From NCBI GenBank assembly GCA_038087875.1, contig CM075978.1:175212001-175276000 (forward strand): a stretch of DNA of 64,000 nt, in the 5' to 3' direction. The notes below the pieces were generated by a model, which was not told the DNA's origin, ran no database searches, and was given only the letters and a program-made list of their open reading frames with translations. Each line of letters starts with the position of its first letter. Within the stretch, counting starts at the first letter, position 1. Shown here one piece after another: positions 25,923-64,000 of this stretch. The stretch comes from Malacoraja senta (lineage: Eukaryota). The position numbers and the translations under genes are program-made.

Positions 25923-25977
25923 ATGTTTATGTTTGCCGTGCTGCTGTGTCTCTCGATCCTGCGCATGAGTTACACAG
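25923..25977 (+). CDS. Gene A exon 1, signal peptide MFMFAVLLCLSILRMSYT
   Basis: Hydrophobic leader ending in phase 1 at AG/gttaat, 170 nt upstream of the V exon. Confidence 0.8.
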
Positions 25978-34900: not shown

Positions 34901-37900
34901 AGACCGTATCACCCGAAGAACACCAACGCAGTCACATTGAGAACGTACACATTCCACACGGACAGCATTCATGGTTAGGATCAAACCTGTGTCTCTCGCG
35001 CTGTGATACAGCAGGTCTACAGCTGCGCCACTGTGCTGCCGCAGCTCTCGTTTGCATTTGGTGTTTCCCAACTAAAATAGACCTCACCAAATATACTGTA
35101 GTAATTGCAATCTGAAAAGGTGAACTCTGGCGGGAGTACGCAGGTCCCTGGATGGTGTTAATGGAAGTTTTGAAAGGGCAAACATTATAATATCTATCGC
35201 TGAATGTGAAGTTACGGTGAGAAAGGAAATAGGTGTTCGCGGATACTGGAGAGTGAAGATGGTTTGTGGTAAAATAATGCCTTTGCGATAAAGAACGTAG
35301 AGAACAGCAGTCAGGCGGTCCCATGCTCGCTTAAAATCCAGAGCATGATTCCTTGAGATTAGAGGGTAGTAGCATAGAAGATGTTTACAAGAATGATCCC
35401 AGGAATCAGTAGGTTAAATTATGATGAACGTTTGTCGGCACTAGGCCTGTATTCGCTGGAGTTTAGAAAGAATGAGGCGGGACCTCATTGAAACATACAG
35501 AATAGCGAAAGGCTTGGATTGAGTGCATGAGGAGAAGATGTTTCCAATCGCGGGAGAGTTTAGGACTAGAGGTCATAGCCTCAGGATTAAATAATTAAAA
35601 GAAGGCCGTGGAGGCCGTCAGTGGATATGTTTTAGGCAGAGATAGATAGATTCTTGATTAGTACAGGTGTCAGAGGTTATGGGGAGAAGGCAGGGGTTAG
35701 GAGAGAGAGAAAGATCAGCCACGATGGAATGGCGGGTGGCCGAATGGCCCAATTCTACTCCTATCCCCTATAATCTATCCTGCAGTCTCGATTGCTGCCG
35801 CACAAATCCACACGTCTTTTAGATGTGGGAGAAACAGCAGCTCTACTAGATGTGTCGTTGTTGAGCACAAGGTGGTGATTTCCCTTCTCAAGGAACCCAA
35901 GGCCTGTTAAATCATCCTACTGAATGTTTCTCTGCCTCGGATTTGCTAAATGGCACTCATTGTTTTATTGGTCTGAGAGTTTCAGGTTACCAATTGAAAT
36001 AACGGGATTTTTTCGAACGCATTACTAATTGTGCAGCACTTAAAATTACTTAAGATTATTTACAGATTATCGGTGAATCTGTGGAATAATTTGCTACAGA
36101 AGGCCGTGGAGGCCGTCAGTGGATATTTTATAGGCCGAGATAGATAGATTCTTGATTAGTACAGGTGTCCGAGGGTATGGGGAGAATGCAGGAGAATGGG
36201 GTTAGGAGGTAGAGATAGTTCAGACATGATTGAATTGTGGAGTAGACGATTGACCGAATGGCTTAATTCTACTCCTATTGCTTGTGACCGTATGAGCTTA
36301 TGGACAAGGAGAAAGCTCTTCTTGTTCCAGGTGGGTGTTGGGACGAGATATCAGAGCAGCAGACTGATAAAAATTGAGCATGCACGACTGAGAACCAAAC
36401 TATGATGGAGGCAAACACGTTGAAGTAAAGGGTGCTTATAGAAACAGCGATACAACGTTTCAAGGTTTCAAGGTCAGTTTATTGTCACATGTACCAATTA
36501 AAGTCCAGTGAAATTTGCGATTATCAGAAAATGTCAAACAATCTCAGAAAATACATATAGGTAATGGATCCCGTTCACCTGGCTGAGTCGGAGGAAATGC
36601 GCTGGAAATAACGGTGCGAGTACGCGGGCTTGTAATTGGAATTAACGCAATAGCACAACCTCCTTGCTTTTACATGTTAGTCCTTTCTTGATAAATAATA
36701 AGATTCCCATTAGCTATGTACCGGCTTTAACTTTAGTTACCATTATGAAATTCTCTCGACGGGTACCCCCCATTGTATATTTTGTTCTTTTGTCTCATAA
36801 ACTCAATCGCTTAATCTTGGTTGTCTCTTCATCGTTTGGGTTTTCACAAGGTACAAATGTTAAATGTAAGTTTTCCACTTCCCCACTATTATGAATAATA
36901 AGCTCAATCGCAGCGACGGAGACTGTATACTTTTCTCCAGACCCAAAGCCAACGGTTCTAGTGTACATGTTTTGTGTAGTTAAAAGAAGAAAACAGGTGC
37001 TTGGGATCAGCTACCCTAATTGTACAAAACCTACTGTCGCCCCATTTCATTCCCTGCATAGTTCCATCAACTCCCCACAAAATGACCATCGCATTAATGT
37101 CGAGGATAGACACAAAATACTGGAGTAGCTGAACGGGACAGGCAGCGTCTTTGGAGAAAAAGAATGGGTGACGTTTCGGGTTGAAACCCTTCTTCAAACT
37201 TAAAGACTATGTATAGTGGCCAATTAACCAACAATCCTGCAAGTTGTTGAGATTTGGGAAAATGTTAGAGTACGCTACGGAAGTAACGTGATCACCGTGG
37301 GAATATAAAAACTCCAGAGAACACTGGAGGTCAGAATTGATCCAGGGTCTCTGCAGATGTGAAACAGCAGATTTACTAACTGCGAAGATGTGCCAGGAGT
37401 GGATCCAGAGTGTCACTTTCTCGGGCACATATGGTTCAAACTATTTTGAAAGCTGGGATAGTGCACGTTGAGATGGGAAATGTTTGAGATACTCAACAAT
37501 CAGACAGTATGAAGAGTAAAACAAAGCTCAATCTTTATAGGCTACTGATAGACATTTTTAAATTTTAGAATCCGTGTTAAGGATGAAATTTGATTGGAAT
37601 TTTGATTGGGCCGCTGAATAAAATAGAAGCGCAAGGCATTAACGGCAAGGGATTAGCACGGATTGAAGATTGGCTGACTGGCAGAGGGCAAATTGTGGCA
37701 ATAAAGGGGCCTTTTGTGGTTTGTTGCGGTTGAGTAGTGGTGTTCTGCAGGGGTCGGTGTTGTGTCTGCTGCATTTTACATTATATGTTAATGATCTGGA
37801 TGATTAAATTGATGGCCTTTTCGCCATTTTTCAGATGACACTAAGGTAGGTGCAGGGGCAGATAGTGCTGAGGAAGCAGGGAGTTTGCTGAAGGACTTGG

Positions 37901-39866
37901 GCAGTTTGGGAGAGTAGGTAAATAAGTGGCAGATGGAATACAGCGTAATAAAGTGAACATGTGGAACCCATTCTGTAATCCCTGGTTCGTGTACTCTGAT
38001 TATTTAATGAAGATAACCTCTGAAAAGTTATAATATTCAGCTTTTATTTTCTCTTTAGGAACACGCGTTAAACTCGTCTGCTTTCTGGCGGGTGGATTTG
38101 CCATATGCGTGTTAATTATTCCAGCGCTGGTATTTTATGCCAGGCGGTGCAAATTACACAGTACTGAAGGTAAGAAGTGACTTGATCCTTGTACGAAATT
38201 GGCAACACGGTGCTGGAGTAACTCTGCGGTTTGGCAGCATCTGAGGAGACAATGGATAGTGGACTTTGGGGGTTGAGTCATATGTGAAAAAGGGTCCCGA
38301 CCCGGAACTTCGGCTATCGATGCCCCCCGTAGATGCTGCCTAACCCGCTGAATTACTACAACACTTCGTGTTTTTTCCGAAAATAGCAATGTTCAGTTGA
38401 AGGAGCAACGAGGAGTGCTGAGATAACGATTTAAACCATCGGGCCTTTTCCCGGCCGCAGCATTCTGTGGGAAACAACATTTTAACCGGTTTAAGCCGTT
38501 GGTTGCAAAAGCATAGTTGTCGTTTGTTCTAAAAGAAGGCGCTTTTAAACACTAGGTGAAATGCTGCAAAGGTCGGGTTCTTTAAATAGGGGCAGTTCTC
38601 ACAGGAAAGCGGAAGCAAACCATAGGTTTTCAACTTTTCCGTGTGCTTTTCCTTAGCATTATGACTAACGAGGAGAGGATTTGTTCAAATAACAAGAATA
38701 GCATGACCGCAATGGTCAATTTCTGCAGCCGAACGAATCTGGCCACAACTCGATTTTTAACTGATTATCGGCAGGCAGGTTGTGACACGTTGATGATTAC
38801 ATTTGGTCGTTTTATTATGTTCTCTACTAGCCCCAGAAAACATTGAGGACAGAACTCACCACTTCGAAAAACAGGTAATTTTTTTGGTGGTATAACAAGA
38901 TATAACATATTGTATCATGTTCTGCTAATGGACGTCCGTGATTATAATCACATTGATGGGACAACAGGATGGATACACTTTTCGTGGAACTCTCTATGTG
39001 CCTCGTTTGCCATTTTCCTTATCCTCCCGAATTCTTATGATATAGTCCATGATCGTCAGCGGCTTGCACTTGCGTATCCTTCGAATTATCCTAAACAGTT
39101 TATGTCTAATCCGTCTGTGTCGCGCGGATTATTCACTTCGTGAAGCGTCATAACCGAGGCCCATCCTGTTCCAATTCAAAATTCACACGTCATATTTTTT
39201 GCGGAGTAGCTCGTACTGATATATGACGGAAAAACTGCTAACATGTCTGGGTCCAGAAATCGCGTCAACTCTATATTTTCCTCGAAGTCATCATCCAACA
39301 AACTTCCGGGCAGTGTTCTGCCCCATGCGTTTCACGATTTGGCTAATAGTTCACTAATTATTCAGGAAACTCAAACCAATTAGATACGAATTGCTTCCGT
39401 TTAATTTTATAGTAATCTCATCATAGGGAAGCAACCATATATAGCAATGGAATGACTGGTCGTGCAGACCCAGCTTCCTCCCGCTAATTTTATGTGTGCT
39501 CGTCTTCGCAGTTGTTTGTAAATGCGGAGTTTATTTCCTTTCAAATAAATGTTCCCTCAGTATCGGACGTACGCAGATTTGAACTTCAGCGGACAGAAGA
39601 AAACTACGAAAAACAGACGTCACGAAGAACAAACTACCTATGGCCAGGTAAGGTAAAAGCGGAAGTGTACTGCAAGGAAAATTCATGTACGTCGCCCATA
39701 TAGGGGAATCAGCAGCTCATAATCTCTGATTATTTTTCGATAGGTCAAAGAAGTGTCAGAAAATAAACTGACCTACGCAACTCTGGATCTCACCGCTTCT
39801 CTGAAACATCCAAGAACGGCGAAGAACAATGAAACAGAGTATGCAGGGATCATGATTTTTAAATAG
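25923..39866 (+). CDS. Gene A: SIRP-like IgSF inhibitory receptor, leader-V(J-type)-C1-TM-tail with 4 Tyr motifs, 341 aa; join(25923..25977,26148..26471,33043..33324,38059..38169,38831..38874,39561..39647,39744..39866)
   Basis: All six introns GT..AG, phases 1,1,1,1,0,0 compatible; summed length 1026 nt = 342 codons including stop; coherent domain order. Confidence 0.88.
26148..26471 (+). CDS. Gene A exon 2, Ig V-set domain with J-like G strand
   Basis: tttttaattctgacag acceptor, G/gtgagt donor; VSLYC, VYW, DSGIYYC, SNGTRIIVH. Confidence 0.95.
27870..28080 (+). mobile_element. Degenerate CR1 fragment in gene A intron 2
   Basis: ..agatttacgaggatgttgcca..gagggtctgagctatagggagag.. (RFTRMLP..EGLSYRE). 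Confidence 0.7.
28472..28790 (+). mobile_element. V-SINE (HE1-like), near full length
   Basis: tRNA head with B-box gttcgatcc, V core, tail ..gggccgaaaggcctggttccgcgttgtatctctaaaactaaaa. Confidence 0.88.
29270..30090 (-). mobile_element. Degenerate Rex1/Babar-type LINE 3' fragment
   Basis: Collinear, decayed similarity to 5906-6734 (ELQKVVDTA, SCLKKAAS, RRYRRLK). Confidence 0.75.
30545..30650 (+). mobile_element. V-SINE 5' fragment
   Basis: cacggtggcgcagtggtagagttgc..gttcgatcct..gtctgtacggagtttgtacgttct. Confidence 0.75.
31000..31800 (-). mobile_element. Degenerate CR1 fragments
   Basis: Decayed CR1 RT region (..FHTVR, DDLGKAVD) and CR1-type 3' end sequence. Confidence 0.55.
32390..32870 (+). 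mobile_element. Rex1/Babar-type fragments (3'UTR with aataaactaaaact tail, then an endonuclease fragment)
   Basis: 3'UTR shared with 41700-41930; PSSPDSAVHADSFSIRRMDR matches 8219-8911. Confidence 0.6.
33043..33324 (+). CDS. Gene A exon 3, Ig C1-set domain
   Basis: ttgtttgcag acceptor, G/gtatga donor; LNC..FFP, LTW, YSCNVSH (C1 YxCxVxH signature). Confidence 0.93.
33590..34090 (-). mobile_element. Degenerate CR1 3' fragment
   Basis: Reverse-complement CR1 3'UTR (ggcccttcggcc) and RT end. Confidence 0.6.
34850..35045 (-). mobile_element. V-SINE fragment
   Basis: Reverse complement of the SINE head (gcagcacagtggcgcagc..ggtttgatcct) and core. Confidence 0.7.
35360..36290 (+). mobile_element. 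Two CR1 3' fragments (about 35360-35780 and 36060-36290)
   Basis: GLYSLEFRR, FPIAGE.RTRGHSL, CR1 3'UTR ..gaatggc..aattctactcctat. Confidence 0.75.
37105..37200 (-). repeat. Penelope-type terminal repeat with near-intact hammerhead core
   Basis: Minus strand reads TTGAAGA-A-gggtttcaaccc-GAAA-CGTC-acccatt. Confidence 0.7.
37590..37960 (+). mobile_element. Degenerate CR1 RT fragment
   Basis: KIEAQGING..LARIEDWL.GR.Q.V.I.G, GVLQGSVL, F.DDTK. Confidence 0.7.
38059..38169 (+). CDS. Gene A exon 4, transmembrane exon (GTRVKLVCFLAGGFAICVLIIPALVFYARRCKLHSTE)
   Basis: cttttattttctctttag acceptor, G/gtaaga donor; uncharged hydrophobic stretch followed by RRCK. Confidence 0.9.
38190..38370. repeat. Degenerate head-to-head pair of Penelope-type terminal repeats
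   Basis: gctggagtaactc..gcagcatct / agatgctgcc..ctgaattac inverted arms around a decayed core (gtgaaaa-agggtcccgaccc-ggaac). Confidence 0.6.
38831..38874 (+). CDS. Gene A exon 5, 44-nt cytoplasmic linker (APENIEDRTHHFEKQ)
   Basis: ttctctactag acceptor, CAG/gtaatt donor; phase 1 to 0; same size and phases as gene B exon 61228-61271. Confidence 0.8.
39561..39647 (+). CDS. Gene A exon 6, cytoplasmic (YRTYADLNFSGQKKTTKNRRHEEQTTYGQ)
   Basis: ttccctcag acceptor, CAG/gtaagg donor; TYADLN ITIM-like motif and TTYGQ ITSM start. Confidence 0.85.
39744..39866 (+). CDS. Gene A exon 7, terminal (VKEVSENKLTYATLDLTASLKHPRTAKNNETEYAGIMIFK*)
   Basis: tatttttcgatag acceptor; ITIM LTYATL, ITSM TEYAGI, TAG stop. 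Confidence 0.88.
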   Translation, partial: VKEVSENKLTYATLDLTASLKHPRTAKNNETEYAGIMIFK

Positions 39867-42109: not shown

Positions 42110-44440
42110 TAGGAAATGAGACAGGGCAGGTGGTGGTGGTATGCGTTGGGGAGCACTTCGGGTACAGTGATCACAATACCATTCGTTTCAATATAATTAT
42201 GGAGAGGGTCAGAACCTAGGGTTGAGATTTTTCATTGGAGAAAGGCTAACTTTGAGGAGATGCGAAAGGATTTAAAAGGAGTGAATTGGAACATGTTGTT
42301 TTATGGGAAGGATGTAGAAGAGAAATGGAGGACATTTAAAGGTGAAATTTTAAGAGTACAGAATCTTTATGTCCCTGTTCGGTTGAAAGGAAATAGTAAA
42401 AATTTGAAAGAGCCATGGTTTTCAAGGGAAATTGGTCACGGTTCGGAAAAAGAGAGAGATCTACAATAATTATAGGCAGCATGGAGTAAATGAGGTGCTT
42501 GAGGAGTATAAAGAATGTAAAAAGAATATTAAGAAAGAAATTAAAAAAGCCAAAACAAGATATGAGGTTGCTTTGGCAAGTAAGGTGAAAGTAAATCCAA
42601 ATGGTTTCTACAGCTATATTAATAGCAAAAGGATAACAAGGAATAAAATTGGTCCATTAGAGAGTCAGAGTGGACAGCTATCTGCAGAGCCAAAAGAGAT
42701 GGGGGAGATATTGAACAATTTATTTTCTTCGTTATTCACCAAGGAGAAGGATATTGAATTATGTGAGGTAAGGGAAACAAGCAGAGTAGCAATGGAAACT
42801 ATGAGATTCAAAGAAGAGGAGGTGTGGACACTTTTGAAAAATATGAAAACCGATAAGTCTCCAGGTCCTGACAGGATATTCCCTCGGACATTGAGGGAAG
42901 TTAGTGTAGAAATAGCAGGGGCTATGACAGAAATATTTCAAATGTCATTAGAAACTGGAATAGTGCCGGAGGATTGGCGTACTGCGCATGTTGTTCCGTT
43001 GTTTAAAAAGGGTTATATGAGTAAACCTAGCAATTATAGACCTGTTAGTTTGACGTCAGTGGTGGGCAAATTAATGGAAAGGATACTTAGAGATAATATA
43101 TATAAGCATCTGGATAAGCAGGGTCTGATTAGGAAGAGTCAACATGGATTTGTCCCTGGAAGGTCAAACGACTAATCTTCTTGAATTTTTCGAAGAGGTT
43201 ACTAGGGAAATTGATGAGGGTAAAGCAGTGGATGTTGTCTATATGGACTTCAGTAAGGCCTTTGACAAGATTCCTTATGGAAGGTTGGTTAAGAAGATTC
43301 AATTGTTGGGTATTAATGGTGGAGTAGCAAGATGGATTCAACAGTGGCTGAATGGGAGATGCCAGAGAGTAATGGTGGATGGCTGTTTGTCAGGGTAGAG
43401 GCCGGTGACTAGTGGGGTGCCTCAGGGGTCTGTGTTGGGTTCACTGTTGTTTGTCATGTACATCAATGATCTGGATGATGGTGTGGAAAATTGGATTAGT
43501 AAGTATGCAGATGATACTAAGATAGGTGATGTTGTGGATAATGAAGTAGATTTTCAAAGTGTACAGAGAGATTTAGGCCATTTGGAAGAGTGGCCTGAAA
43601 GATGGCAGATGGAGTTTAATGCTGATAAATGTGAGGTGCTACGTCTTGGCAGGACAAATCAAAATAGGACGTACATGGTAAATGGTAACGAATTGAGGAA
43701 TGCAGTTGAACAGAGGGATCTAGGAATAACTGTGCATAGTTCCCTGAAGGTGGAATCTCATGTGGATAGGGTGGTAAAGAAAGCTTTTGGTGTGCTGGCC
43801 TTTACAAATCAGAGCATTGAATATAGAAGTTGGGATGTAATGTTAAAATTGTACATGGCATTGGTGAGGCCAATTCTGGAGTACGGAGTACAATTTTGGT
43901 CGCCTAATTATAGGAAGGATGGCAACAAAATAGAGAGAGTACAGAGGAGATTTACTAGAATGTTGCCTGGGTTTCAGCAACTAAGTTACAGAGAAAGGTT
44001 GAACAAGTTAGGTCTTTATTCTTTGGAGTGCACAAGGTTAAGGGGGGACTTGATAGAGGTCTTTAAAATGATGAGCGGGTTAGACAGAGTTGACGTGGAT
44101 AAGCTTTTCCCATTGAGAGTAGGGAAGATTCAAACAAGGGGACATGACTTGAGAATTAAGGGACAGAAGTTTAGGGGTAACATGAGGGGGAACTTCTTTA
44201 CTCAGAGAGTGGTAGCTGTGTAGAATGAGCTTCCAGTGGAAGTGGTGGAGGCAGGTTCGATTTTATCCTTTAAAAATAGATTGGATGGGTATATGGACGG
44301 GAAAGGAATGGAGGGTTATGGTCTGAGTGCGGGTAGATGGGACTAGGGAGAAGAAAGAAGAAAGAAGGGGAAAAAAGGTTCGGCACGGACTTGAAGGGCC
44401 GAGATGGCCTGTTTCCGTGCTGTAATGGTTATATGGTTAT
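42110..44440 (+). mobile_element. Young 5'-truncated CR1 (subfamily with (GTTATATG)n tail), with a few stops and frameshifts
   Basis: ORF pieces 42260-44223 (NYRPVSLTS, YMDFSKAFD, GVPQGSVLG, KYADD); near-identical to 54280-56364. Confidence 0.93.
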
Positions 44441-51479: not shown

Positions 51480-54275
51480 ATAATCGAAGCAAAGACCGAG
51501 CGAAAGAGCCAATGTTGGCGGTTCTATCTACATGTTCTCGATTTCATTCTATTGGTTGTAGCTGGGGGGAGGAGGGGGGTAGGGGCTGACAAATTGGGAG
51601 TATAAGGGTGGAGTTAAAGGGGAAGAGAGTACAGGAAAGACGAATTAATGGGACGGAAAGTTCTAGAAGGGATAAGAGAGTAAGGTCATGTGAAATAGGA
51701 ACCGGCGTGAGAGGGGAGGTGAATAACGAATTGAAAGTGTTATATATGAATGTGCGAAATATAAGAAATAAAGTGGATGAGCTTGAGTTAGAAGTTGGTA
51801 AGTATGATATTGTGGGAATTGCAGAGACATCGCTGCAAGAGGGTCAGAGCTGGGAACCGAATATTCAGAGGTATACGTCCTATCGAAAAGACAGACAGGT
51901 GGGCAGATGGTGTGGGGTAGCACTGTTGGCACGGAATTATATTCAGTCCCTTGCAAGGGATGACATAGAATCAGAAGATGTAGAGTGAATAGAACTGAGA
52001 AATTGTCCCCCAAAAAACCCTAAGGGGAGTTATCCACAAGCCCCCAAACAGTAGCCTGGATATAGGGTGCAAGTTGCATCAGGAGTTAAAATTGGCATGT
52101 AACAAAGGTAATGCTACGTTGGTTATGGGAGATTTCAACATGCAGGTAGACTGAGAAAATCAGGTTGGTACTGGAACCCAAGAAATTGAGTTTGTAGAGT
52201 GCCCCTGAGATAGATTCTTAGAGCAGCTTGTACTGGAGCCTATCAGGGAGAAGGCAATACTGGATGTAGTGTTGTGTAATGAACCGGATTTGATAAGGGA
52301 ATTCAAGGTAAGGAACCATTAGGAGGTAGTGACCATAATATGATGTTTTAATCTGCAATGTGAGAGGGAGAATGTAAAATCGGAACTGTCAGTATTGTAG
52401 TTGAACAAAGGGGACTATGGAGGCATGAGGGAGGAGCTGGCCAAAGTTGACTGGAAAGGCAGCCGAGCAGGAATGACAGTGGTACACCAATGACAGCTAT
52501 TTCTGGGAACAATCCAGAAGCTGCAGGATCATTTCATTCCAATGAAGAAGAAAGATTCTAAGGGGAGTAAGAGGCGACCGTGGTTGACAAGGGAAGTCAA
52601 GGACAGTGTAAAAATAATAAGAAAAGGCGTATAACAGAGCAAAGATGAGCGGGAGACCAAAGGATTGGGAAACTTTTAAAGATCAACAGAAGGTAAATAA
52701 AAAGGCAATACAGGGAGAAAAGATAAGCACGAAGGTAAGCTCGCCAAGAATAGAAAGGAGGACAGTAAAACATATTTAGGTATGTGACGAGGAATAAAAT
52801 AGTTAAGACAAATATGGGTCCCTTGAAGACAGAAACAAGGGGAACAAGGGAATGGCAGACGAGTTGAACAGGTACTTTGGTTCTGTCTTCACTCAGGAAG
52901 CCACAAACAATCATCCCAGATGTACTAGGGGACAGAGGACCTTGGGTGATGGAGGAACTGAAGGACATTCACATCAGTCAGGCAATGGTGTTGGGTAGAC
53001 TGGTGGGATTGAAGGCTTATAAATCCCCAAGGCATGATGGTCTACATCTCAGGGTATTCAAGGAGGTGCCTCTAGAAATCGTGGATGCATTGGTGATCAT
53101 TTTCCAATGTTCCATAGATTCTGGATCAGTTTCTGTGGATTGGAGGGTAGCTAATGTTATCCCATTTTTTAAGAAAGGAGGGAGAGAAAATGCAGAGGAT
53201 TATAGACCAGTTAGCCTGACATCGATGGTGGGGAAGAGCACTGGAGTCGATTACTAAATATGTAATTGTGGTGCACTTGGATAGTAGTAACAGGATCGGT
53301 CCGAGTCAGCATGGATTTACGAGGGGGAAATCATGCTTGACTAATCTTCTGGAATTTTTTGACGATGTAACACGTAAAATGTTCAAGGGAGAAATATTAA
53401 TGATTTAGATGAAGGAATTAAAAGTAGCATTAGCAAATTTGCAGATGACACAAGTCTGGGTTGCAGTGTAAACTGTGAAGAGGATGCTATGAGGATTCAG
53501 GGTGACTTGGACAGGTTGGGTGAGTGGGCAGATGCATGGCAAATGCAGTATAATGTCGATAAATGCAAGGTTATCTACTGGTGGCAAGAAGAGGAAGGCA
53601 GATTATTATCTGAATGATGTCAGGTTAGGAAAAGGGGAGTACAACGAGACCTAGGTGTCCTTGTACATCAGTCACTGAAAGTAAGCATGCAGGTACAGCA
53701 GGCAGTGAAGAAAGCCAATGGCATGTTGGCCTTCATAACAATAGGAGTTGAGTATATGAGCAAAGAGGTCCTTCTGCAGTTGTACAGGGCCCTGATGAGA
53801 CCACACCTGGAGTAGTGTGTGCAGTTTTGGTCTCCTAATTTGAGGAAGGACATTCTTGCTGTTGAGGGAGTGCAGCTTAGGTTCATGAGGTTAATTCACA
53901 GGATGGCGCGACTGGAGCGGCTGGGCTTGTATTCACTGGAATTTAGAAGGATGAGAGAGGATCTTGTAGAAACATATAGAATTATTAAGGGATTTGACAC
54001 GCTAGATGCAGGAAACATTTTCCCGATGTTGGGGGAGTCCAGAACCAGGGACCACAGTTTAAGAATAAGGGGTAAGCTATCTAGAACTGAGATGAGGAAA
54101 AACCATTTCACCCAGAGGGCTGTGAATTTGTGGAATTGGAGGCAGTGGAGGCCGATTCATTGGATGCATTCAAAAGAGAGCGAGATAGAGCTCTTTGGAT
54201 CATCAGCCATGATCACATTGAATGGAGGTGCTGGCTCGGGGGACCGAATGGCCTACTACTGCACCTATTGTCCAT
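51480..54275 (+). mobile_element. Older CR1 covering the ORF2 start (APE) to the 3'UTR, with many stops and deletions
   Basis: LKVLYMNVRNIRNKVDELE at 51608-51988; RT pieces 52877-53257 and 53819-54295. Confidence 0.9.
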
Positions 54276-54279
54276 GTAA

Positions 54280-56364
54280 GGTTGAAAGGAAATAGTAAAA
54301 ATTGGAAAGAGCCATGGTTATCAAGGGAAATTGGACACTTGGTTCGGAAAAAGAGAGACATCTACAATAATTATAGGCAGCATGGAGTAAATGAGGTGCT
54401 TGAGGAGTATCAAGAATGTAAAAAGAATATTAAGAAAGAAATTAGAAAAGCTAAAAGAAGATATGAGGTTGCTTTGGCAAGTAAAGTGAAAGTAAATCCA
54501 AAGGGTTTCTACAGCTATATTAATAGCAAAACGATAACAAGAAATAAAATTGGTCCATTAGAGAGTCAGAGTGGACAGCTATCTGCAGAGCCAAAAGAGA
54601 TGGGGGAGATATTGAACAATTTCTTTTCTTCGGTATTCACCAAGGAGAAGGATATGGAATTATGTGAGGTAAGCGAAACGAGCAGAGTAGCAATGGAAAC
54701 TGTGAGATTCAAAGAAGAGGAGGTGCGGACACTTTTGAAATATATGAAAACGGATAAGTCAGGTCCTGACAGGATATTCCCTAGGACATTGAGGGAAGTT
54801 AGTGTAGAAATAGCAGGGGCTATGACAGAAATATTTCAAATGTCATTAGAAACGGGAATAGTGCCGGAGGATTGGCGTACTGCGCATGTTGTTCCGTTGT
54901 TTAAAAAGGGTTATAAGAGTAAACCTAGCAATTATAGACCTGTTAGTTTGACGTCAGTGGTGGGCAAATTAATGGAAAGGATACGTAAAGATAATGTATA
55001 TAAGCATCTGGATAAGCAGGTTCTGATTAGGAACAGTCAACATGGATTTGTGCCTGGAAGGTCATGCTTGACTAATCTTCTTGAATTTTTCGAAGAGGTT
55101 ACTAGGGAAATTGATGAGGGTAAAGCAGTGGATGTTGTCTATCTGGACTTTAGTAAGGCCTCTGACAAGGTTCCTCATGGAAGGTTGGTTAAGAAGGTTC
55201 AATTGTTGGGTATTAATGGTGGAGTAGCAAGATGGATTCAACAGTGGCTGAATGGGAGATGCCAGAGAGTAATGGTGGATGGCTGTTTGTCAGGTTGGAG
55301 GCCGGTGACCAGTGGGGTGCCTCAGGGGTCGGTGTTGGGTCCATTGTTGTTTGTCATGTACATCAATGATCTGGATGATGGTGTGGAAAATTGGATTAGT
55401 AAGTATGCAGATGATACTAAGATAGGTGGTGTTGTCGATAATGAAGAAGATTTTCAAAGTCTACAGAGAGATTTAGGCCATTTGGAAGAGTGGGCTGAAA
55501 GATGGCAGATGGAGTTTAATGCTGACAAATGTGAGGTGCTACATCTCGGCAGGACAAATCAAAATAGGACGTACATGGTAAGTGGTAGCGAATTGAGGAA
55601 TGCAGTTGAACAGAGGGATCTAGGAATAACTGTGCATAGTTTCCTGAAGGTGGAATCTCATGTAGATAGGGTGGTAAAGAAAGCTTTTGGTGTGCTGGCC
55701 TTTATAAATCAGAGCATTGAATATAGAAGTTGGGATGTAATGTTAAAATTGTACAAGGCATTGGTGAGGCCAATTCTGGAGTATGGAGTACAATTTTGGT
55801 CGGCTAATTATAGGAAGGATGTCAACAAAATAGAGAGAGTACAGAGGAGATTTACTAGAATGTTGCCTGGGTTTCAGCAACTAAGTTACAGAGAAAGGTT
55901 GAACAAGTTAGGTCTTTATTCTTTGGAGTGCAGAAGGTTAAGAGGGGACTTGATAGAGGTCTTTAAAATTATGAGCGGGTTAGACAGAGTGGACGTGGAT
56001 AAGCTTTTCCCATTGAGAGTAGGGAAGATTCAAACAAGGGGACATGACTTGAGAATTAAGGGACAGAAGTTTAGGGGTAACATTAGTGGGAACTTCTTTA
56101 CTCAGAGAGTGGAAGCTGTGTGGAATGAGCTTCCAGTGGAAGTGGTGGAGGCAGGTTCGATGTTATCCTTTAAAAATAGATTGGATGGGTATATGGACGG
56201 GAAAGGAATGGAGGGTTATGGTGTGAGTGCAGGTAGATGGGACTAGGGAAGTAAAATTAAAAAAATTAAAATTAAAAAAATTAAAAGTGTTCGGCACTGA
56301 CTTGAAGGGCCGAGATGGCCTGTTTCCGTGCTGTTATGGTTATATGGGTATATGGTTATATGGT
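54280..56364 (+). mobile_element. Young 5'-truncated CR1 with an uninterrupted RT-containing frame to its natural stop
   Basis: ORF 54222-56246 (674 aa; first residues come from the flanking element); YRPVSLTS, QHGF, PQGSVLGP, KYADD; (GTTATATG)n tail. Confidence 0.95.
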
Positions 56365-56471
56365 ATCTATTCATGTATGTAACGACAGACTACCTTACAT
56401 AGATAATTGGTTAACATGTATTCATCTTTGATTCGTGAGTTATTCCATTAATTGGCTCTTGTTACACTTAC

Positions 56472-56582
56472 CTGGGCATATACCGTGCTTTCTTCAACAT
56501 ATCTGCATTTAGTTGATGCCTTTAGACCAGCGATGTTTAGAGTAGTATACGTTAACTTTGGATCACATTCGGATTGCACTGT
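56472..56582 (-). CDS. Gene B second 111-nt cytoplasmic exon (TVQSECDPKLTYTTLNIAGLKASTKCRYVEESTVYAQ)
   Basis: ataactttcag acceptor, CAG/gtaagt donor; ITIM LTYTTL, TVYAQ ITSM start; read-through gives VSVTRAN* (TAA 56450-56448). Confidence 0.83.
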
Positions 56583-59500
56583 CTGAAAGTTATCACAATT
56601 TGTTATAATTATTACATCAATCAACATATTTCCAAAAATACACCACCGCCGCCAGTAACGGACATTGTAAATTATATCAAAATATCAAATGTCTTTATTA
56701 ATATGAAAAATGTTATTATATTAATATTATATTTTCTTCTGCGAAAGAACAAATTAATTCATTTATCGCTGCTCTGGGTTGCCCAGTGATCATTGGCTAA
56801 ACATAAGACTATGCATTAGCATCTAGCCAAACAAAATATACTGCTAAGTAGGGCGATTTAATTTTTTTTAATGTTCCTGCGTGGAAATAGTTGCTGAAGG
56901 CCTCATCTGCATCATTTCCCAATGTTGATCGGATTGGAAGTAAATGTTCTCTCTTGTGTCTTTAAATTCAACTAGCTATGGTTTATTTGAACGGGGGCGC
57001 CTTCTCTTACTGGTCCCCGTTTTGTGCATTTAAGTGTTATATTTTATTTATTTGGCCACAGACTCGTTTGCCAGCCTTCTGTCTGCACTTTATTTAATGC
57101 TCACTTGGGTTTCATTTTCCCTTTCTTTAAGCTTCTCTGCTGTGTCATCGAAAAATGCAAGCGAGAGAAATACATTTTCTATTTACCATTTTCTGATGGT
57201 TCTCAAATTTATCATTTCAAACATTTTCCAATACCGAATATCCTTACTTGTTTATTCGCCATTTAGAGCATCAAACTATTGGGCATGGTAACCAGGCCAC
57301 AATTGGAAACTTATTTTATTCTTACTGTCATGGAGTGGCCCATGGAAACACTAATTTCCATTCTAAATTTGACTTTATTTTGTATTGCACCACTGTTGAC
57401 TTAGCCACCAGAACTGATTTTCCTGCCGACTTTCATTTAATGTGAAACTCAATGAAACTCAATGAACGAAATTAAACTGCCATGATACATTTTCATTATT
57501 AGTGGATGTATCTGGACTGACATGCAGGAGATTCACAATTGTGTAGGTGCAATTCGGATACAAAATTACAGGCTCACACCCCCTAGCCAGGAAGAGAAGG
57601 GACATTACAGATGTAATAATTGGGACCAACCCCATTCATGTAAGGGAATATGCGGGGCTCCCTATTACATGCCGCAGAGAAAATAATGAGAACAGTCCTC
57701 AAACACTTCTAATTAAAAAGCTACACGACAACTATTAACGAGGATTGCGTATGAAAAGTTATTTTCAGTTTTAACTACCCTCGCAAATGGTCCCCAGTTT
57801 ACATTACCTACAAAATGAAACCCACGAATCTAACATTCATAAGAGCACCAAACCCACAAAGATTGCATGGTAACCATAGCAACTTTCTCAATCTTTTCAG
57901 TCTCCGTGCTTCACATCACCTCCCACAAGTCCCCTTCAGCTGGGATGCCCGAGCTTTGCAAAACATCCGACAACTGTCACTGAGGGGTCTTGAGAATTCT
58001 GCAGTAAATGCAATCCAACTCGCTACCTGATGTTATTTCTGAATGGTCAAATAATAACAGTGATATTTAGATCCATTTCAGGTGTGACAGCACAGGCTTT
58101 GAAGTAAAGACTAGGCCTTGAACCAGGCTTTATTTTCCCCCGAAACTCCAAAAAGCCATGATTTGAGAAATGATCGACCTACACAGACAAAGCGCACGCG
58201 TGGAGAAGTATGCTATCAATTAAATCTCCATGAAATCATCAAACCCCCCAGGCAGTGAGCAAAGCAATATCAGCGTCCACACTCAGGCTAACGCCCGGAA
58301 CTTAAACAAAAATAAACAATAGCGTCAGGAGTGCCTTCTAGTGTCTCTACTGCAGTGTTGAAATATTACCACTAATCTTTATCTCGTGTGCTTTGCAGTC
58401 AAAGAGTCGGACAGCGCAAAAATGGATCCTTCTGCCACGGTGATAATACCAAACTTATGCCCATCTATACTTATGGCCAGTTTCTGAACTTATTGCCCGT
58501 GGATGTATCTGTATAAAAGCCGTTTAAACGTAGCAATTGTATCCGATTCTAGCACTTCCCCTGACAGCGTGTTACAGATATCAAACACACTACACTGTAC
58601 ATAAAAAACTTACCATGCAGTAATCTCAAATGCATTGCTTGCCTAATATAATAATGATATCATATCTTGTCAGATTATTCATTGTGTCTGGGTTGTCCGT
58701 TGTTACATCATGTTGCAGGGATCAGTCTTTATTCATAATGCTATCCCTGCAATTATGCTATATCATTATGAGATTGCAAACCCTGATTCTAAGCAACCAA
58801 ATCAGGATAAATATGAACACCTATTTGTCGGCCTCTAAAATGTTGCAGCTTTTTGTAAAGAAGAAGAAGAAGAAGAAGTTTTTTGTGAACATCCTTTATT
58901 CTCTCTTCTCCAATATGTGTTCCTAACATCTCCCCATGTAGCAAAACCAGTCACCGCAAAGATCAATCAGGCGAATGTTCCCTGCACTATTTCTATCACG
59001 GGTATATTCCAATTACAGTATCATTGGGTTCTGTATAATTGGAGTCATGTGGTTCACTGGTTGTTATTGCTCCAGATGAACTATCCGAGAGCGTTACTAT
59101 CACCACAGGAAATATTCTGGGCTGTATCAAAGGCTCATACATGATAAATTGCTCATAAATGACCTTCCGTCCATCTTAAATCACATCTGAGGTGTTCACT
59201 GAATGTTTGCACCATATTCTGTTCCGCTTGCATATTCTCAGAAATTCAAATAGTCCATCCCTGTTGGCAATTTCACGACCGGATAGACTAAAGGTGTTGG
59301 GTGACACCACAAAAAATGTAGTCCAACCGATTACCCTGAACTTCAGTGGCATTGCGATCACTGAATCCTCCAACATCAACTCTTTAGTACTCATCATAGA
59401 TCACAAATGTACGAGGATTAGCCTCATAAATAGTAGAGCTACAAGAGTAGGCTGTGTATCCTGCGAAAAGCTACCCAATCACTGACTCGGAAACTTTTTC

Positions 59501-62032
59501 TCATCGTCAAAGCATAATTTGGGCATGTGATAGAATGACTTTCATTTGGCAAGCTGAGTGCAGTTCCTGCAAATGTTCCAATTCCAGACACCTGACACCA
59601 TGCAGGTCTAATCAGTGCATTTGGTTCCCAACCCAGCTACCGTAAGCAGTTATTTCCTTCACCAGTGTACTATTCACTACGTAAACTGCAGCTATTCATC
59701 CCATCCATTACATAAGCGCATAGCTATCTTTTGATCTCCACGCCTAGAGAACAAAGTTTGAATGGGATCACTGCAACGTGTAGGTTCCTCTCCGAGTCAT
59801 ACACGTTCCTTACTTAGAAATTGGTTGCCAGTCCTCCCTCCTTGTTGGGTCTAAATCCCCCCAAGCTTCTACACGAAGCAATATGATAGCACCTTTATCT
59901 GAAGCACGAGAGAGATTCAAGATTGTGCCCTCTTATCACCACCTGAATTTCAGTTAGTGGTGTATTATGGATTATAGCCTTGCTTATTCACGATAAGTAA
60001 TGGGTTTTTTAATTAAAGCAAAGGCCATCAATTCTGTCGTTTCGATTAGATTTCCCCCTTTTTGAAACTGCATTTTGTTAATTGTAATTAGACAAAGCTA
60101 CGAACGAAGCACTCAGATACATCTTGAAATTACATTCAACTGTGATTCATTCGCTGCTCTGTGAAATGACGCATGTTGCACATACCTGGGTATATATTGT
60201 GCTCGGTTCTGAATATTTATCTTCGGCAGATCGCTTTGCATCAGCGATACGGAAAGCACTGTAAACAATTGCTTCATCGGGTTCCCAATGCTTAGTCTAA
60301 AAAACAGTATTTTGTTAAATTTCTTTCCTACGAATCAAAATATTTTCCATAAATTTACCACAATAGACAAAATTAAACATCGTACATTCCAGCAGCATGC
60401 CAAATTCCGAAGAAAAAAGCTATCGGAAAAGGAATGTATCGACTTGCATAGACCTTGATGACTGCTCTCCTTGAGAGGCGTGTGTACATTTGGTCTCTTT
60501 GACTGTGACGAGATCTTCCTATGATGGGGTGAGCTCAGTGAGATTTCAACAGACTGATAGACTGTGTCAAGCCTAACGTATGCATTGGGTTAAATTGAGG
60601 TAATTTCACTAAAATTTGGAAGCATGAGAAGGCAGCCAGACAATTGTTTACAAATCCACGGTATATGATGGTGTAAGGTTGTTCCCCATTGATGGCAAAA
60701 CCAGTACCAGGAACCATTGTAAAAGAATACGGGAAAAGCGATTTCAAACTGTAAAGGGGTCAGCGTTCTTCTCCAGGAGAGAAGAAAATCTCTCACAAAT
60801 CACTCGAATCCAATTTATGAAATATATTCAAAATGATGTGAACATTGTTATAATATGATAGAGAACTACAGCGCGAAACAAGTCTCAGGGATCAAGGGTT
60901 ATCGGGAGAAAGCAGGAGCGGGACAGTGAATTTGCAGGATGAGCCATGAGCGCATTGAACAACCAAGAAAGGTCGAAGGACCATATCGCTTATTCCTTCT
61001 CCTAATTCTACGTTTCTATCGCCATGCTTCCATTAAAAAACATCAAGTACACAGGTGGGCCTACAGTAGCTGTGTTTGCATTTGAAGGCATTACTGAGGA
61101 ATTTCATTTTGCTCCAATTTCATCACGCAAGTTGACGTAGAATCTTGTAATTATCCAAACGAAGGTAATAATTGGGAGGATGTCCGAGTGCTGTTTGAAC
61201 GTATCTGCAGTATTATACATATCTTACCTTCGTTGTATGCTCTGCACGTCCTTTCGATATTCTGCACGTCCCTAGAGGGAGGTAATTTAGAATAAAAAAC
61301 TTTTGGCCCATAGAAAGAATCGTAGTAGCCAGTAAATCTAGCAGCATATACATTTTTTTAACTTTTCAGTTTGTATACATGTATGTAGCAAAACTAATAT
61401 CACGATACCAATTGTTAAAAATCTACAGGATATTAGTACTCTTCGAGTTGTCGGAGCACATTCAATTACAGAATGTGTTTTTGCATCACCGACCCATTTT
61501 CTCAGACTCAACCCCTTATCCCACAACCTGCCCCAAAACACCAAGCATCTATCCTTCATGAACAAATCGGTGACTAACTCAAAAGTTAGCTTCCGAGAAA
61601 CGATGCACTCGGTGAGATGGGGCGTATGTACCACAGACCAGCTAACGCATGCAGTGTCCGATCCAATATAACTCTCCAATATTATTTTCTCCGGGATTCT
61701 CCCACTCTCCAAAGACGTACAGATTTGTAGATTAAATGGCTTGGTATAATTGTAAATTCTCCCTAGTGTGTGTACGATAGTGTGAGTATGCCGGGGGGTC
61801 GCTGGTCGGCGCCGACTCGGTGGGCCGAATCATCTGTTTCCGAGCTGTGTTTCTAACTAAAGTATTGCTGAATTTTGATTAATTCTGGTTAATTTCATAA
61901 CAATCTCGAGATCAAAAAGTTTGGGAGTCTTACCTTTACGTTTCACAATGAAAATAATGATTATAAGAGGTATCAATCCTGCTCCTATGCAACCAAAAAT
62001 CGAGTTAGGAAATGGATTATCGAGTAATGAAA
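56472..62032 (-). CDS. Gene B (partial): paralogous IgSF inhibitory receptor, TM plus cytoplasmic exons; join complement(61934..62032,61228..61271,60186..60296,56472..56582); ectodomain beyond 64000, last exon unresolved
   Basis: Canonical GT-AG boundaries, phases 1,1,0,0,0; exon sizes, phases and Tyr motifs parallel gene A. Confidence 0.82.
59170..59940 (+). mobile_element. Ancient, degenerate LINE (CR1/L2-type RT C-terminus) in a gene B intron
   Basis: PITLNFSGIAITESSNINSLVLIIDHK..INSRATRVG resembles LINE RT C-terminal regions. Confidence 0.55.
60186..60296 (-). CDS. Gene B 111-nt cytoplasmic exon (TKHWEPDEAIVYSAFRIADAKRSAEDKYSEPSTIYTQ)
   Basis: ctgttttttag acceptor, CAG/gtatgt donor; IVYSAF ITIM-like motif, TIYTQ ITSM start. 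Confidence 0.83.
60880..61020 (+). mobile_element. Degenerate CR1 3'UTR
   Basis: gggatcaagggttatcgggagaaagcagga..aaggtcgaagg..ttctcctaattcta. Confidence 0.6.
61228..61271 (-). CDS. Gene B 44-nt linker exon (GTCRISKGRAEHTTK)
   Basis: cctccctctag acceptor, AAG/gtaaga donor; phase 1 to 0. Confidence 0.8.
61735..61860 (+). mobile_element. V-SINE 3' fragment
   Basis: ..ctccctagtgtgtgtacgatagtg..gctggtcggcgccgactcggtgggccgaa..tgtttctaactaaa. Confidence 0.75.
61934..62032 (-). CDS. Gene B TM exon (xSLLDNPFPNSIFGCIGAGLIPLIIIIFIVKRK)
   Basis: ttattgtttacag acceptor, G/gtaaga donor; uncharged TM followed by KRK. Confidence 0.88.
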
Positions 62033-63519
62033 CTGTAAACAATAAAATAATGGTCAGTTGTAATATATTTATAGTGTTAATAATAGGACAGGCTATTATT
62101 TCAAACGCATAATTCTGTCTTTGTTTATATCGAGTTGATGTCGACGGGAATAAACACACATGAACATTGCCCATGAACTCAATTGCTGTTTTTTTCATTT
62201 TTGTCTCATGCTAGTTGTGTGTAAATAACATAATCAAAGAATCATCTAGGTGCAGAAGAACCAAATATTTTCCTGCAACCAATTCTAAACAGTATATAAG
62301 TATGTAGCTTGGATATGTCGCAGAGCATAACAAGTAGTGATTTATAGCTGTGTCGGTACAACAAGTTTGTGGAATGTCCACGAATGGGAAGGGATAAAAA
62401 GTTATATACTCTTCACCTTGTGATTCAACAGTGTGGCTGGAAAAAAATCTCCACCGTCATTGCGTTTTTTGGCGACCCTGGTGTGCTCGAGGCAGAATTA
62501 CAGACGATGCAGTATTCGTGGAATATTGGGAATGTAATTAAGGAAGTTGAATTTTGCTGTGAAATCCGATCCCAAATCGAATAGAGGCTTTTAAATTAAT
62601 TCCAAGAGAGTGGTAGGAAAATCGAAGGTAGATTTCGCTCGCTGCGACTGAACAGTGGAAATACCATTAGTGACAAATGAGGTGCTGTACAACACAGAAA
62701 CACATAATCCTTTGTTTTTTAAATCCAGAGTATCGATGGAAAACCGATTTTTTTGGAACCGTTCATTCTAATGATGTGCATGACCTCGTAGTCTACTTCC
62801 AAAGGCGAATTGACGTCCGCAGTATTCAGGGTGGCACGGCGACTATCGAAAATCCATAGAGAACACAGACGAAAATGCTCCTTTCCTGTAGAATATCAAT
62901 GAGCTACCTGGAGGGGTTAGGCATGGCAGCAGATTCACGCTCTCTCCCTCAAACACAAGAAGCATTCCCTGAATGATTTTATTGATTTGCGGTAACGAAT
63001 CGATTAAATTTGTCAAGAGTCCTATTAACAGAGCTTTAGTGAAAGGACGCGCACATATCAATTTCTGACCTGTCTCGTAATCTTACTTCAAATGCATCAA
63101 ATGACAACTTACATGGGTCAGCTTTTATGTTTGGTTACAAGTTTTGTAAGAACCATAAACTGATTACTGCACAGGATCTTATTCCACCCACGCTTTCCAA
63201 TCCGATAATTGAAGAGCAACATCCTATATCCAGCTTGTTCTCTGTAAAACTCTCTTCGTTGCTTTCCTTCGTATGCCTTCTTGAAAGTTTGTTTATTGAT
63301 TAGTTGACTGGTTTCATTCTATGAGCGACAGCATTAATAACCAACATTTTGATTGAAGCTTTGTCGAATCTTTTTTATTCAAAACTCTTCATTGACGTCA
63401 GCTACTGCAATCATTCCTCAAAATTTCTTGTTACCTCTTTACAAAAGAAGTCTATCCAATATTTAGACAAACGCGAATTAATGTTATAACTTTTATAAGA
63501 AGAAAGTACAAATGCTGGA

Positions 63520-63700
63520 TAAAACCGAATAGACACAAAAAAACGCTAGTAACTCAGCGGAACAGGCAGCATCTCTGGAGGGAAGGAATGGGTGACGTTT
63601 CGGGTCGGGTCTGAAGAAAGGTCTCGACCCGAAACGTCACCCATTCCTTCGCTCCAGAGATGCTGCCTGTCCCGATGAGTTACTCCAGCTTTTTGTGTAT
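63520..63700. repeat. Fold-back pair of Penelope-type terminal repeats
   Basis: Long inverted arms: gtaactcagcggaacaggcagcatctctggag..ggaatgggtgacgtttcgggtcg / cgacccgaaacgtcacccattcc..ctccagagatgctgcctgtcccgatgagttac. Confidence 0.9.
63607..63642 (+). ncRNA. Minimal type I hammerhead ribozyme motif (Penelope-type)
   Basis: gggt-CTGAAGA-A-aggtc.tc.gaccc-GAAA-CGTC-accc; stem I gggt/accc, predicted cleavage after C63638; A.C mismatch at the base of stem II. Confidence 0.7.
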
Positions 63701-64000
63701 ATCTTTAATTTTATAACTTGGTTGTTAGATTTTCTCCATTATGTACAAGTGTTTCCAATGTACAAGCAATGTTCATTATTCGGGCATGAAACAGCGTGTC
63801 CTCAAAATATTTTCAAAAATTCTGGCATTGATTTTCTAAAGCAGTTATTTTCTTAAATTATAACAATGGCAGATCAGGAAACGATGACAAAATGTTCAAA
63901 TGTCTCAGAGAATCAATTAAATTGAAACCATTTGATAGATTCGTTTACGCGTGGGAGGAACCTGCCATCTTTTTGCAAAGTACATTGGAATTCATTGCAA

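What the first reader, a model, noticed from the sequence alone, without database searches (positions are those of the whole stretch)
56448..62032. Second, tail-to-tail receptor gene on the minus strand: the window is part of a receptor cluster
Seen: TM exon, 44-nt linker and two 111-nt ITIM/ITSM exons, three of them invisible in the ORF track. The layout matches gene A but the sequence is strongly diverged. No V or C1 exon was found in 62033-64000, so the ectodomain lies outside. Both TMs lack charged residues (inhibitory type). Known: such families usually occur as paired-receptor clusters with activating members bearing a TM Lys or Arg. Inference: activating counterparts may lie nearby.
Basis: partly seen in the sequence, partly recalled or inferred. 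Interest (0 to 1): 0.75.

Follow-up and report, generated by a model that had tools for sequence, protein, structure and literature searches.

The report
Second skate inhibitory receptor gene tail
The four small minus-strand exons are real and encode the membrane anchor and the "off-switch" tail of a second immune receptor gene, an old and diverged copy of the one next to it; this is an ordinary extra member of a large shark and ray gene family, and its outer half lies outside the window.

Summary
Observation confirmed. On the minus strand there are four exons with canonical splice sites and matching phases. They are a TM exon (61934-62032), a 44-nt linker (61228-61271), a 111-nt tyrosine cassette (60186-60296) and a last cassette (56448-56582).

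The spliced 128-aa tail scores 57 bits against a profile built from 14 tails of other species. The best of 2000 shuffles scores 12.6. The same exon layout, including a 44-nt linker, occurs in homologues from a sevengill shark and a zebra shark.

The gene is a diverged paralogue of + strand gene A. Both belong to a V-C1 receptor family of cartilaginous fish that databases label "SIRP-alpha-like", "B7-H6-like" and similar. This scan has met the family several times on other DNA.

- Only the distal cassette has a canonical ITIM (LTYTTL) and ITSM (TVYAQV).
- The proximal cassette is degenerate (IVYSAF, TIYTQT).
- The last exon is 135 nt; it reads through a perfect GTAAGT to a stop.

Not testable here:
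- The ectodomain, because the flank could not be reached.
- Transcription, because only DNA runs were served.
- A nearby activating partner. None lies in the window. Arg-TM relatives exist in other species, and scan notes place one 8.5 kb upstream.

Verdict: a new member of a known kind, of low to moderate interest.

The parts
61934..62032 (-). Stalk plus transmembrane exon of gene B. It is 99 nt and phase 1 to 1. The helix is uncharged, has the family's GC-x-G-x-G start, and is followed by the KRK stop-transfer.
   Evidence: It aligns with the TM exons of family members. The acceptor is tttacag and the donor is gtaaga.
61228..61271 (-). 44-nt linker exon, phase 1 to 0. It resets the frame between the TM exon and the tyrosine cassettes.
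   Evidence: Gene A has a 44-nt exon in the same position (38831-38874), as does Heptranchias P0040 (L002). Stegostoma P0003 has a 47-nt one (L001).
60186..60296 (-). Proximal 37-aa tyrosine cassette exon, 111 nt, phase 0 to 0. It starts with TKH as in shark homologues. Its motifs IVYSAF and TIYTQT are degenerate versions of the ITIM and ITSM.
   Evidence: The family profile scores it at E 0.044 as a lone piece. It is 39% identical to cassette 2, with Tyr at positions 12, 28 and 35 in both.
56448..56582 (-). Distal cassette and last coding exon, 135 nt including the TAA. It carries a canonical ITIM (LTYTTL) and a canonical ITSM (TVYAQV).
   Evidence: phmmer of this exon alone against 1.84 billion proteins finds one hit, a horn shark receptor with four such cassettes (E 1e-8). 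The family profile gives E 3.3e-6.
56466..56471 (-). Perfect 5' splice-site hexamer GTAAGT after codon 37 of the distal cassette. Its GTA supplies the Val at Tyr+3 of the ITSM. If it is read through, the frame stops 7 codons later.
   Evidence: In all aligned homologues the Tyr+3 hydrophobic residue and a short C-terminus lie inside the last exon. No further cassette lies downstream on this strand.
56300..56364 (.). Start of highly repeated DNA about 84 nt after gene B's stop. It continues into a LINE with an open 674-aa reverse-transcriptase frame (54222-56246, + strand).
   Evidence: Depth jumps from about 25 to over 350,000, with loose ends at 56347-56364. The nearest AATAAA for gene B lies 528 nt past the stop, inside the repeat.
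38059..39866 (+). Tail of gene A, used for comparison: TM 38059-38169, linker 38831-38874, cassette 39561-39647, last exon 39744-39866. It is convergent with gene B.
   Evidence: The family profile gives E 2e-9 and 8e-7 for its two cassette exons.

Best explanation
The four exons are the 3' half of a second gene, gene B. It belongs to the cartilaginous-fish V-C1 immunoglobulin-superfamily receptor family that also includes gene A. It is transcribed from the minus strand towards gene A.

What the exons encode:
- a short stalk;
- an uncharged transmembrane helix;
- a linker;
- two 37-aa tyrosine cassettes.

Inferred mechanism:
1. A ligand binds the upstream Ig domains, which were not seen here.
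2. Src-type kinases phosphorylate the tail.
3. The distal pair LTYTTL and TVYAQV, 23 residues apart, docks the tandem SH2 domains of SHP-1/SHP-2-type phosphatases, which damp activation. This is how the SIRP-alpha, PECAM-1 and PD-1 tails work.
4. The proximal cassette is a weakened copy.

Gene B is an old paralogue of gene A, not a recent copy. Its last exon looks like an internal cassette that ends by reading through its former splice donor.

Shown: exon structure, homology and motifs. Inferred: the ectodomain, expression and phosphatase recruitment.
For: - Canonical splice sites and compatible phases for all four exons.
- The spliced tail aligns collinearly across all exon junctions with family tails: 31% identity over 120 aa to Callorhinchus P0020/P0015 and 31% over 128 aa to Heptranchias P0040.
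- The family profile scores the tail at 57.1 bits against at most 12.6 for 2000 shuffles.
- The distal exon alone retrieves a horn shark family member from 1.84 billion proteins.
- The same TM, 44/47-nt linker, cassette and terminal-cassette exon layout occurs in Heptranchias and Stegostoma genes.
- The invariant KLTY and the terminal YAx[VIL] of the family are kept.
- There are 128 codons without a stop despite about 26% identity to gene A, which argues for long purifying selection.
Against: - No V or C1 exon is in the window, and the flank could not be fetched.
- No protein of this genome was found in the databases.
- No RNA data: X1 and X2 are DNA, with flat depth and unspliced contigs.
- The proximal ITIM and ITSM are non-canonical.
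- A repeat or LINE sits 84 nt after the stop, and no poly(A) signal precedes it.
- No close orthologue of the tail was found; the best hits are near 30% identity.
Confidence: 0.75

Rival explanations
1. Gene B is an orphan or dying gene. The tail exons are still open, but the gene is not expressed or has lost a working ectodomain or 3' end. That would make it a young pseudogene in a birth-and-death cluster.
For: - The proximal cassette has degenerate motifs.
- A repeat was inserted 84 nt after the stop, and there is no nearby poly(A) signal.
- No orthologue closer than about 31% was found.
- Scan notes report several broken copies of such genes elsewhere in this genome.
Against: - All four exons keep open frames, splice sites, the KLTY core and the terminal ITSM.
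- The profile score is far above the shuffles.
- First-cassette motifs are also variable in apparently intact homologues such as P0016 and P0018.
Confidence: 0.2
2. The distal cassette is not the last exon. The perfect GTAAGT at 56471-56466 is used, and one or more further exons lie downstream beyond the inserted retroelements, or a read-through form and a spliced form are both made.
For: - The donor is a perfect consensus.
- Internal 111-nt cassettes ending just like this exist in Stegostoma and, by protein repeat, in Heterodontus.
Against: - No further cassette-like exon lies on the minus strand between 39867 and 56447.
- The read-through end (Val at Tyr+3, then six residues and a stop) matches the shape of family C-termini.
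Confidence: 0.1
3. The exons are chance open frames with chance splice-like sites.
For: Three of the four exons are short, and they were picked by eye for being open.
Against: - The tail scores 57.1 bits against at most 12.6 in 2000 shuffles.
- Out of 2007 window pieces, only the tails of genes A and B hit the family profile.
- The 44-nt linker and the exon phases are conserved across species.
Confidence: 0.01

Closest known systems
Unnamed V-C1 receptor family of cartilaginous fish. Examples are Heterodontus P0001/P0002, Stegostoma P0003, Heptranchias P0040 and Callorhinchus P0015/P0020. NCBI labels them SIRP-alpha-like, SIRP-beta-like, NCR3LG1-like, CD276-like and tapasin-related-like.
   Same: - A TM exon with the GC-x-G-G/A start.
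- A 44-47-nt phase 1-to-0 linker exon.
- Tyrosine cassette exons of 34-37 aa with a KLTYxxL core and a second Tyr 23 residues later.
- A terminal YAx[VIL] followed by a short end.
   Different: - The tail is only about 30% identical to any member found.
- The proximal ITIM has Phe at +3.
- There is an extra Tyr at cassette position 28 in both cassettes.
- The last exon ends by reading through a splice donor.
- The ectodomain was not seen.
Gene A of the same window (25923-39866, + strand)
   Same: The exon order and phases are the same, the linker is 44 nt in both, the TM is uncharged, the Tyr-Tyr spacing is 23, and both have the LTYxTL ITIM.
   Different: - About 26% identity over the tail.
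- Each gene is closer to proteins of other species than to the other (A to Hemitrygon P0038, 73 bits; B to Callorhinchus P0020, 59 bits; A to B, 30-32 bits).
- Exon sizes are 111/44/87/123 nt in A and 99/44/111/135 nt in B.
Mammalian SIRP-alpha (SHPS-1, PTPNS1)
   Same: Established knowledge: SIRP-alpha has a tail with two pairs of inhibitory tyrosines, about 24-26 residues apart, that recruit SHP-1/SHP-2. It has a V plus C1-type ectodomain and activating SIRP-beta partners with a charged TM. The database names of the relatives point the same way.
   Different: - The relatives have one C1 domain, not two.
- Their ectodomains match SIRP-alpha (2wng), B7-H6 (6yjp) and antibody chains about equally at E near 1e-9, so no orthology is shown.
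- CD47 binding is unknown.
- Gene B has only one canonical motif pair.
PD-1 / PECAM-1 type ITIM-ITSM tails
   Same: An ITIM is followed about 23-25 residues later by an ITSM, a spacing that fits tandem SH2 domains (established knowledge). The distal cassette has LTYTTL followed by TVYAQV.
   Different: No sequence relationship was shown. Here the pair is a one-exon module that is repeated.

Membership tests
Cartilaginous-fish V-C1 'SIRP-like' receptor family | The tail is homologous to family tails along its whole length | tested here: met
   Family-only profile: 57.1 bits, against at most 12.6 for shuffles. blastp gives up to 59 bits, collinear over 120-128 aa.
Cartilaginous-fish V-C1 'SIRP-like' receptor family | Exon layout: TM exon (phase 1 to 1), 44-47-nt linker (1 to 0), then cassette exons (0 to 0) and a terminal cassette | tested here: met
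   Gene B; gene A; Stegostoma L001; Heptranchias L002.
Cartilaginous-fish V-C1 'SIRP-like' receptor family | An ectodomain of one V-set and one C1-set domain | not testable with these tools
   No Ig exon lies in 62033-64000. The flank could not be fetched. Only the unchecked note s1-140493 places a VJ+C1 pair 1.4 kb beyond the window.
ITIM-bearing inhibitory receptors (functional class) | At least one cytoplasmic [SIVL]xYxx[IVL] motif and an uncharged TM helix | tested here: met
   LTYTTL at tail residue 96 and the ITSM TVYAQV at 119. The TM has no Arg, Lys, Asp or Glu. The proximal IVYSAF and TIYTQT fail the consensus.
ITIM-bearing inhibitory receptors (functional class) | Phosphorylation-dependent recruitment of SHP-1, SHP-2 or SHIP | not testable with these tools
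   This needs biochemistry.
SIRP family proper (SIRP-alpha/beta/gamma) | V-C1-C1 ectodomain and orthology to tetrapod SIRP genes | tested here: not met
   Tested on relatives only. Pfam finds one V and one C1 domain. Matches to solved structures are equally weak for SIRP-alpha, B7-H6 and antibody chains. Gene B's own ectodomain was not seen.
Paired activating/inhibitory receptor cluster | A neighbouring family gene with an Arg/Lys TM helix and a short tail | tested here: inconclusive
   None in the window. Arg-TM short-tail members exist in Heptranchias, Scyliorhinus, Chiloscyllium, Pristis and Mobula. In Heptranchias the Arg-TM P0004 and the inhibitory P0040 lie 9 Mb apart on one chromosome. 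The unchecked note s1-140762 reports a V-C1-TM(Arg) gene 8.5 kb before the window.

The most novel reading that the evidence does not exclude
Gene B, gene A and the neighbours reported in scan notes could form a true paired inhibitory/activating V-C1 receptor cluster in skates. In such a cluster, tails would be built and remodelled from a one-exon ITIM-ITSM cassette. Cassette number would change by exon duplication, and a gene could end simply by reading through a cassette's splice donor, as gene B appears to do. That would give an early-vertebrate model for how SIRP-type paired receptors and their tails evolve. I found no paper that describes this family.
Probability: 0.3. Interest if true: 0.5.

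Novelty: new member of a known kind. Interest (0 to 1): 0.3.

Why it matters
The finding adds one more member, and an old lineage, to a large family of V-C1 inhibitory receptors in cartilaginous fish. That family sits in databases under inconsistent automatic names, and four full-text searches found no paper describing it.

The tail shows how such receptors are built from a repeated one-exon tyrosine cassette. It also gives a concrete case of a cassette becoming the last exon through read-through of its splice donor.

For annotation, it shows that three of the four exons are too small for ORF-based gene finding. By itself it is not surprising. This scan has already reported the same family at several other places in this genome.

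Tried and rejected
1. RNA evidence. Two run searches returned no run marked as RNA. Laying X1 and X2 showed flat depth over exons and introns, unspliced contigs and no splice joints, so those two are genomic DNA. Transcription could not be tested.

2. Reaching the flank beyond 64000. Exact look-ups of three window ORFs found nothing on record: the 674-aa RT, a 53-aa ORF near the end and the 113-aa ORF over the TM exon.

3. Finding the gene's own annotated protein. Two alignment searches seeded with gene B's exons, one of them also with gene A's V and C1 exons, returned only shark, ray and chimaera relatives. No skate protein and no masked own-window row appeared. I did not type the spliced tail into the large searches, because it has no reference.

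4. The open stretch 62846-63082 (-) reads a little like the start of an Ig domain. Pfam found nothing and tblastn found nothing, so I rejected it.

5. Search for an Arg-TM exon in the window using the C-termini of 12 short-tailed relatives: no hit had an E-value below 0.2, so nothing significant.

6. UrIg/UrIg2 (PMC12227049) were considered and rejected. They have a VJ domain plus several C1 domains and are secreted or long-stalked, and the paper's text has no occurrence of 'ITIM'.

7. Rfam scan of the window: no family.

8. The look-up of P0002's locus failed, and no DNA was served for Mobula P0016.
Full report
**What is there**

Read on the minus strand, 56448-62032 holds four short exons with canonical splice sites.

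| Exon | Coordinates | Length | Phase | Splice sites |
|---|---|---|---|---|
| TM | 61934-62032 | 99 nt | 1 to 1 | acceptor tttacag, donor gtaaga |
| Linker | 61228-61271 | 44 nt | 1 to 0 | acceptor ctctag, donor gtaaga |
| Cassette 1 | 60186-60296 | 111 nt | 0 to 0 | acceptor ttttttag, donor gtatgt |
| Cassette 2 | 56448-56582 | 135 nt incl. TAA | 0 to stop | acceptor ctttcag |

- The first 111 nt of cassette 2 end at a perfect CAG|GTAAGT.
- Translating straight through it gives seven more codons and a TAA at 56450-56448. That is the finding's start coordinate.
- Joined, the exons give 128 residues: a ten-residue stalk, an uncharged helix, a KRK stop-transfer, a linker and two 37-residue cassettes.
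- Both cassettes carry Tyr at positions 12, 28 and 35.

**Is it more than chance?**

- I built a profile from the tails of 14 family proteins of other species, leaving out both skate genes. The spliced gene B tail scores 57.1 bits as one collinear match. The best of 2000 shuffles of the same residues scores 12.6.
- I scored the same profile against all 2007 stop-to-stop pieces of the window in six frames. The top hits were gene A's two cassette exons, then gene B's cassette 2 (E 3.3e-6), then cassette 1 (E 0.044), then gene A's TM exon. Nothing else was significant.
- Cassette 2 alone, searched against 1.84 billion representative proteins, found exactly one protein at E 1e-8.
- That protein is a horn shark receptor with a V domain, a TM helix and four 37-residue cassettes of the same kind.

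**What family it belongs to**

Searches seeded with that protein and with the window's exons returned 45 proteins. They come from horn shark, sevengill shark, zebra shark, catsharks, bamboo sharks, smooth-hound, sawfish, devil rays, stingrays and elephant fish.

- Most of those scanned have one V-set and one C1-set domain; a few, such as P0001, have only the V domain.
- Their automatic names disagree: SIRP-alpha-like, SIRP-beta-1-like, NCR3 ligand 1-like, CD276 homolog, tapasin-related-like, and even TCR beta-like or Ig lambda-like.
- Against solved structures, a typical member matches antibody chains, B7-H6 and SIRP-alpha about equally, at E near 1e-9. No orthology to a mammalian gene is shown.
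- Four full-text searches, and a reading of three papers on shark non-rearranging V genes and CD28-family receptors, found no description of this family. UrIg and UrIg2 are a different thing.

**Conservation of the gene layout**

- I mapped the zebra shark protein P0003 on its locus L001. It has a TM exon, a 47-nt linker, a 111-nt cassette and a terminal cassette exon.
- I mapped the sevengill shark protein P0040 on L002. It has a TM exon, a linker of exactly 44 nt, a 102-nt cassette and a terminal cassette exon.
- Gene A in this window has exons of 111, 44, 87 and 123 nt with the same phases.
It extends across sharks and batoids.

In a multiple alignment, gene B keeps these family features:
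- the GC-x-G-x-G start of the helix;
- the stop-transfer;
- the TKH start of a cassette;
- the near-invariant KLTY core;
- the xTVYAQT junction between cassettes;
- a terminal YAx[VIL] followed by a short end.

1. By the strict consensus, only the distal cassette has an ITIM (LTYTTL) and an ITSM (TVYAQV). The proximal cassette reads IVYSAF and TIYTQT.
   - A Thr at Tyr+3 at cassette junctions is usual in the family.
   - The first motif is variable in other members too.
2. The Val that completes the last ITSM is the GTA of the splice-donor hexamer.
   - In every homologue aligned, that residue and the short C-terminus lie inside the last exon.
   - No further cassette lies downstream on this strand.
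   - I therefore read cassette 2 as the last coding exon, probably a former internal cassette that now ends by read-through. Use of the donor cannot be excluded without RNA.

**How old the paralogue is**

- The tails of A and B share about 26% identity, scoring 30-32 bits.
- Each scores higher against proteins of other species: A reaches 73 bits against a stingray protein, and B reaches 59 bits against elephant fish proteins.
- The two genes are therefore old lineages, not a recent tandem copy.
- Keeping 128 open codons, four splice-site pairs and the key tyrosines over that distance argues for selection during most of its history.

**The surroundings**

- Genes A and B are convergent. A ends at 39866 and B ends at 56448.
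- The 16.6 kb between them is full of reverse-transcriptase ORFs.
- Highly repeated DNA starts about 84 nt after gene B's stop.
- The first AATAAA for gene B is 528 nt downstream, inside that repeat. Gene A has one 190 nt after its stop. This is a mild point against a fully intact gene B.
- No Ig exon lies between the TM exon and the window end.

**What could not be tested**

- Transcription. The two runs that hold nearly the whole stretch are genomic DNA, with flat depth of about 25 and 6 over introns and exons and no splice joints.
- The flank. Exact-product look-ups of window ORFs found nothing, and no protein of this genome appeared in the searches.
- The ectodomain therefore rests on homology of the tail and on an unchecked scan note (s1-140493). 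That note places a germline-joined VJ plus C1 pair 1.4 to 4.5 kb beyond the window end. The distance is right for gene B, because gene A's C1-to-TM intron is 4.7 kb.

**Activating partners**

- No Arg- or Lys-bearing TM exon was found in the window.
- The family does have such members. Short-tailed proteins with an Arg inside the helix occur in sevengill shark, catshark, bamboo shark, sawfish and devil ray. In the sevengill shark the helix and stop are in one terminal exon.
- There, the Arg-TM gene and the inhibitory P0040 lie 9 Mb apart on one chromosome.
- The flanks of the shark loci hold exons of further family members on the opposite strand. Clustering in mixed orientation is therefore typical.
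- Scan notes report a V-C1-TM(Arg) gene 8.5 kb before this window (s1-140762) and more copies 123 to 440 kb away (s1-140182, s1-140092, s1-140180). I could not check these.

**Mechanism**

- Shown: a type I membrane tail with an uncharged helix, and a canonical ITIM followed 23 residues later by a canonical ITSM.
- Inferred from the established behaviour of SIRP-alpha, PECAM-1 and PD-1 tails: after ligand binding and Src-kinase phosphorylation, this pair binds the tandem SH2 domains of SHP-1/SHP-2-type phosphatases and lowers activation. The degenerate proximal pair probably contributes less.

**Verdict**

- The object is an additional, diverged member of a receptor family that is known to databases but not described in the literature I could search.
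- This scan has already met the family on other DNA of the same genome.

Noticed in passing
window 34580-34663 (+): A weak V-domain-like stretch containing a stop lies in gene A's C1-to-TM intron (tblastn with gene A's V exon, E 2.5). It may be a relic Ig exon or chance.
   Followed up: no
window 63538-63694: A hairpin repeat with 70-nt arms, 90% complementary, and a 17-nt loop. Look-alike copies sit in gene A's introns near 37110-37200 and 38205-38345. No Rfam family matches anywhere in the window.
   Followed up: partly
window 54222-56246 (+): An open 674-aa reverse-transcriptase ORF of a LINE lies directly downstream of gene B's stop, and near copies occur at 42432-44223. The element looks young, and it separates gene B from any original poly(A) site.
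   Followed up: partly
L001 3049-4430 (-): In the zebra shark locus, V and C1 exons of a second family member lie head-to-head 5.6-7 kb upstream of the P0003 gene. They are not among the genes called within the fetched locus.
   Followed up: no
L002 2068-2166 (-) and 6481-6750 (+): In the sevengill shark locus, a terminal cassette exon on the opposite strand and a lone V-like exon lie upstream of the P0040 gene. These may be further uncalled members or relics.
   Followed up: no
P0001 / P0002 (Heterodontus francisci): The tail holds four 37-aa cassettes arranged as two identical 74-aa double units, which points to a very recent two-exon duplication. One isoform skips the C1 domain.
   Followed up: no
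window 57378, 58141, 58296, 58672: A second individual (run X2) differs at four intron positions and at none in the four exons. Four differences are too few to say anything about selection.
   Followed up: no
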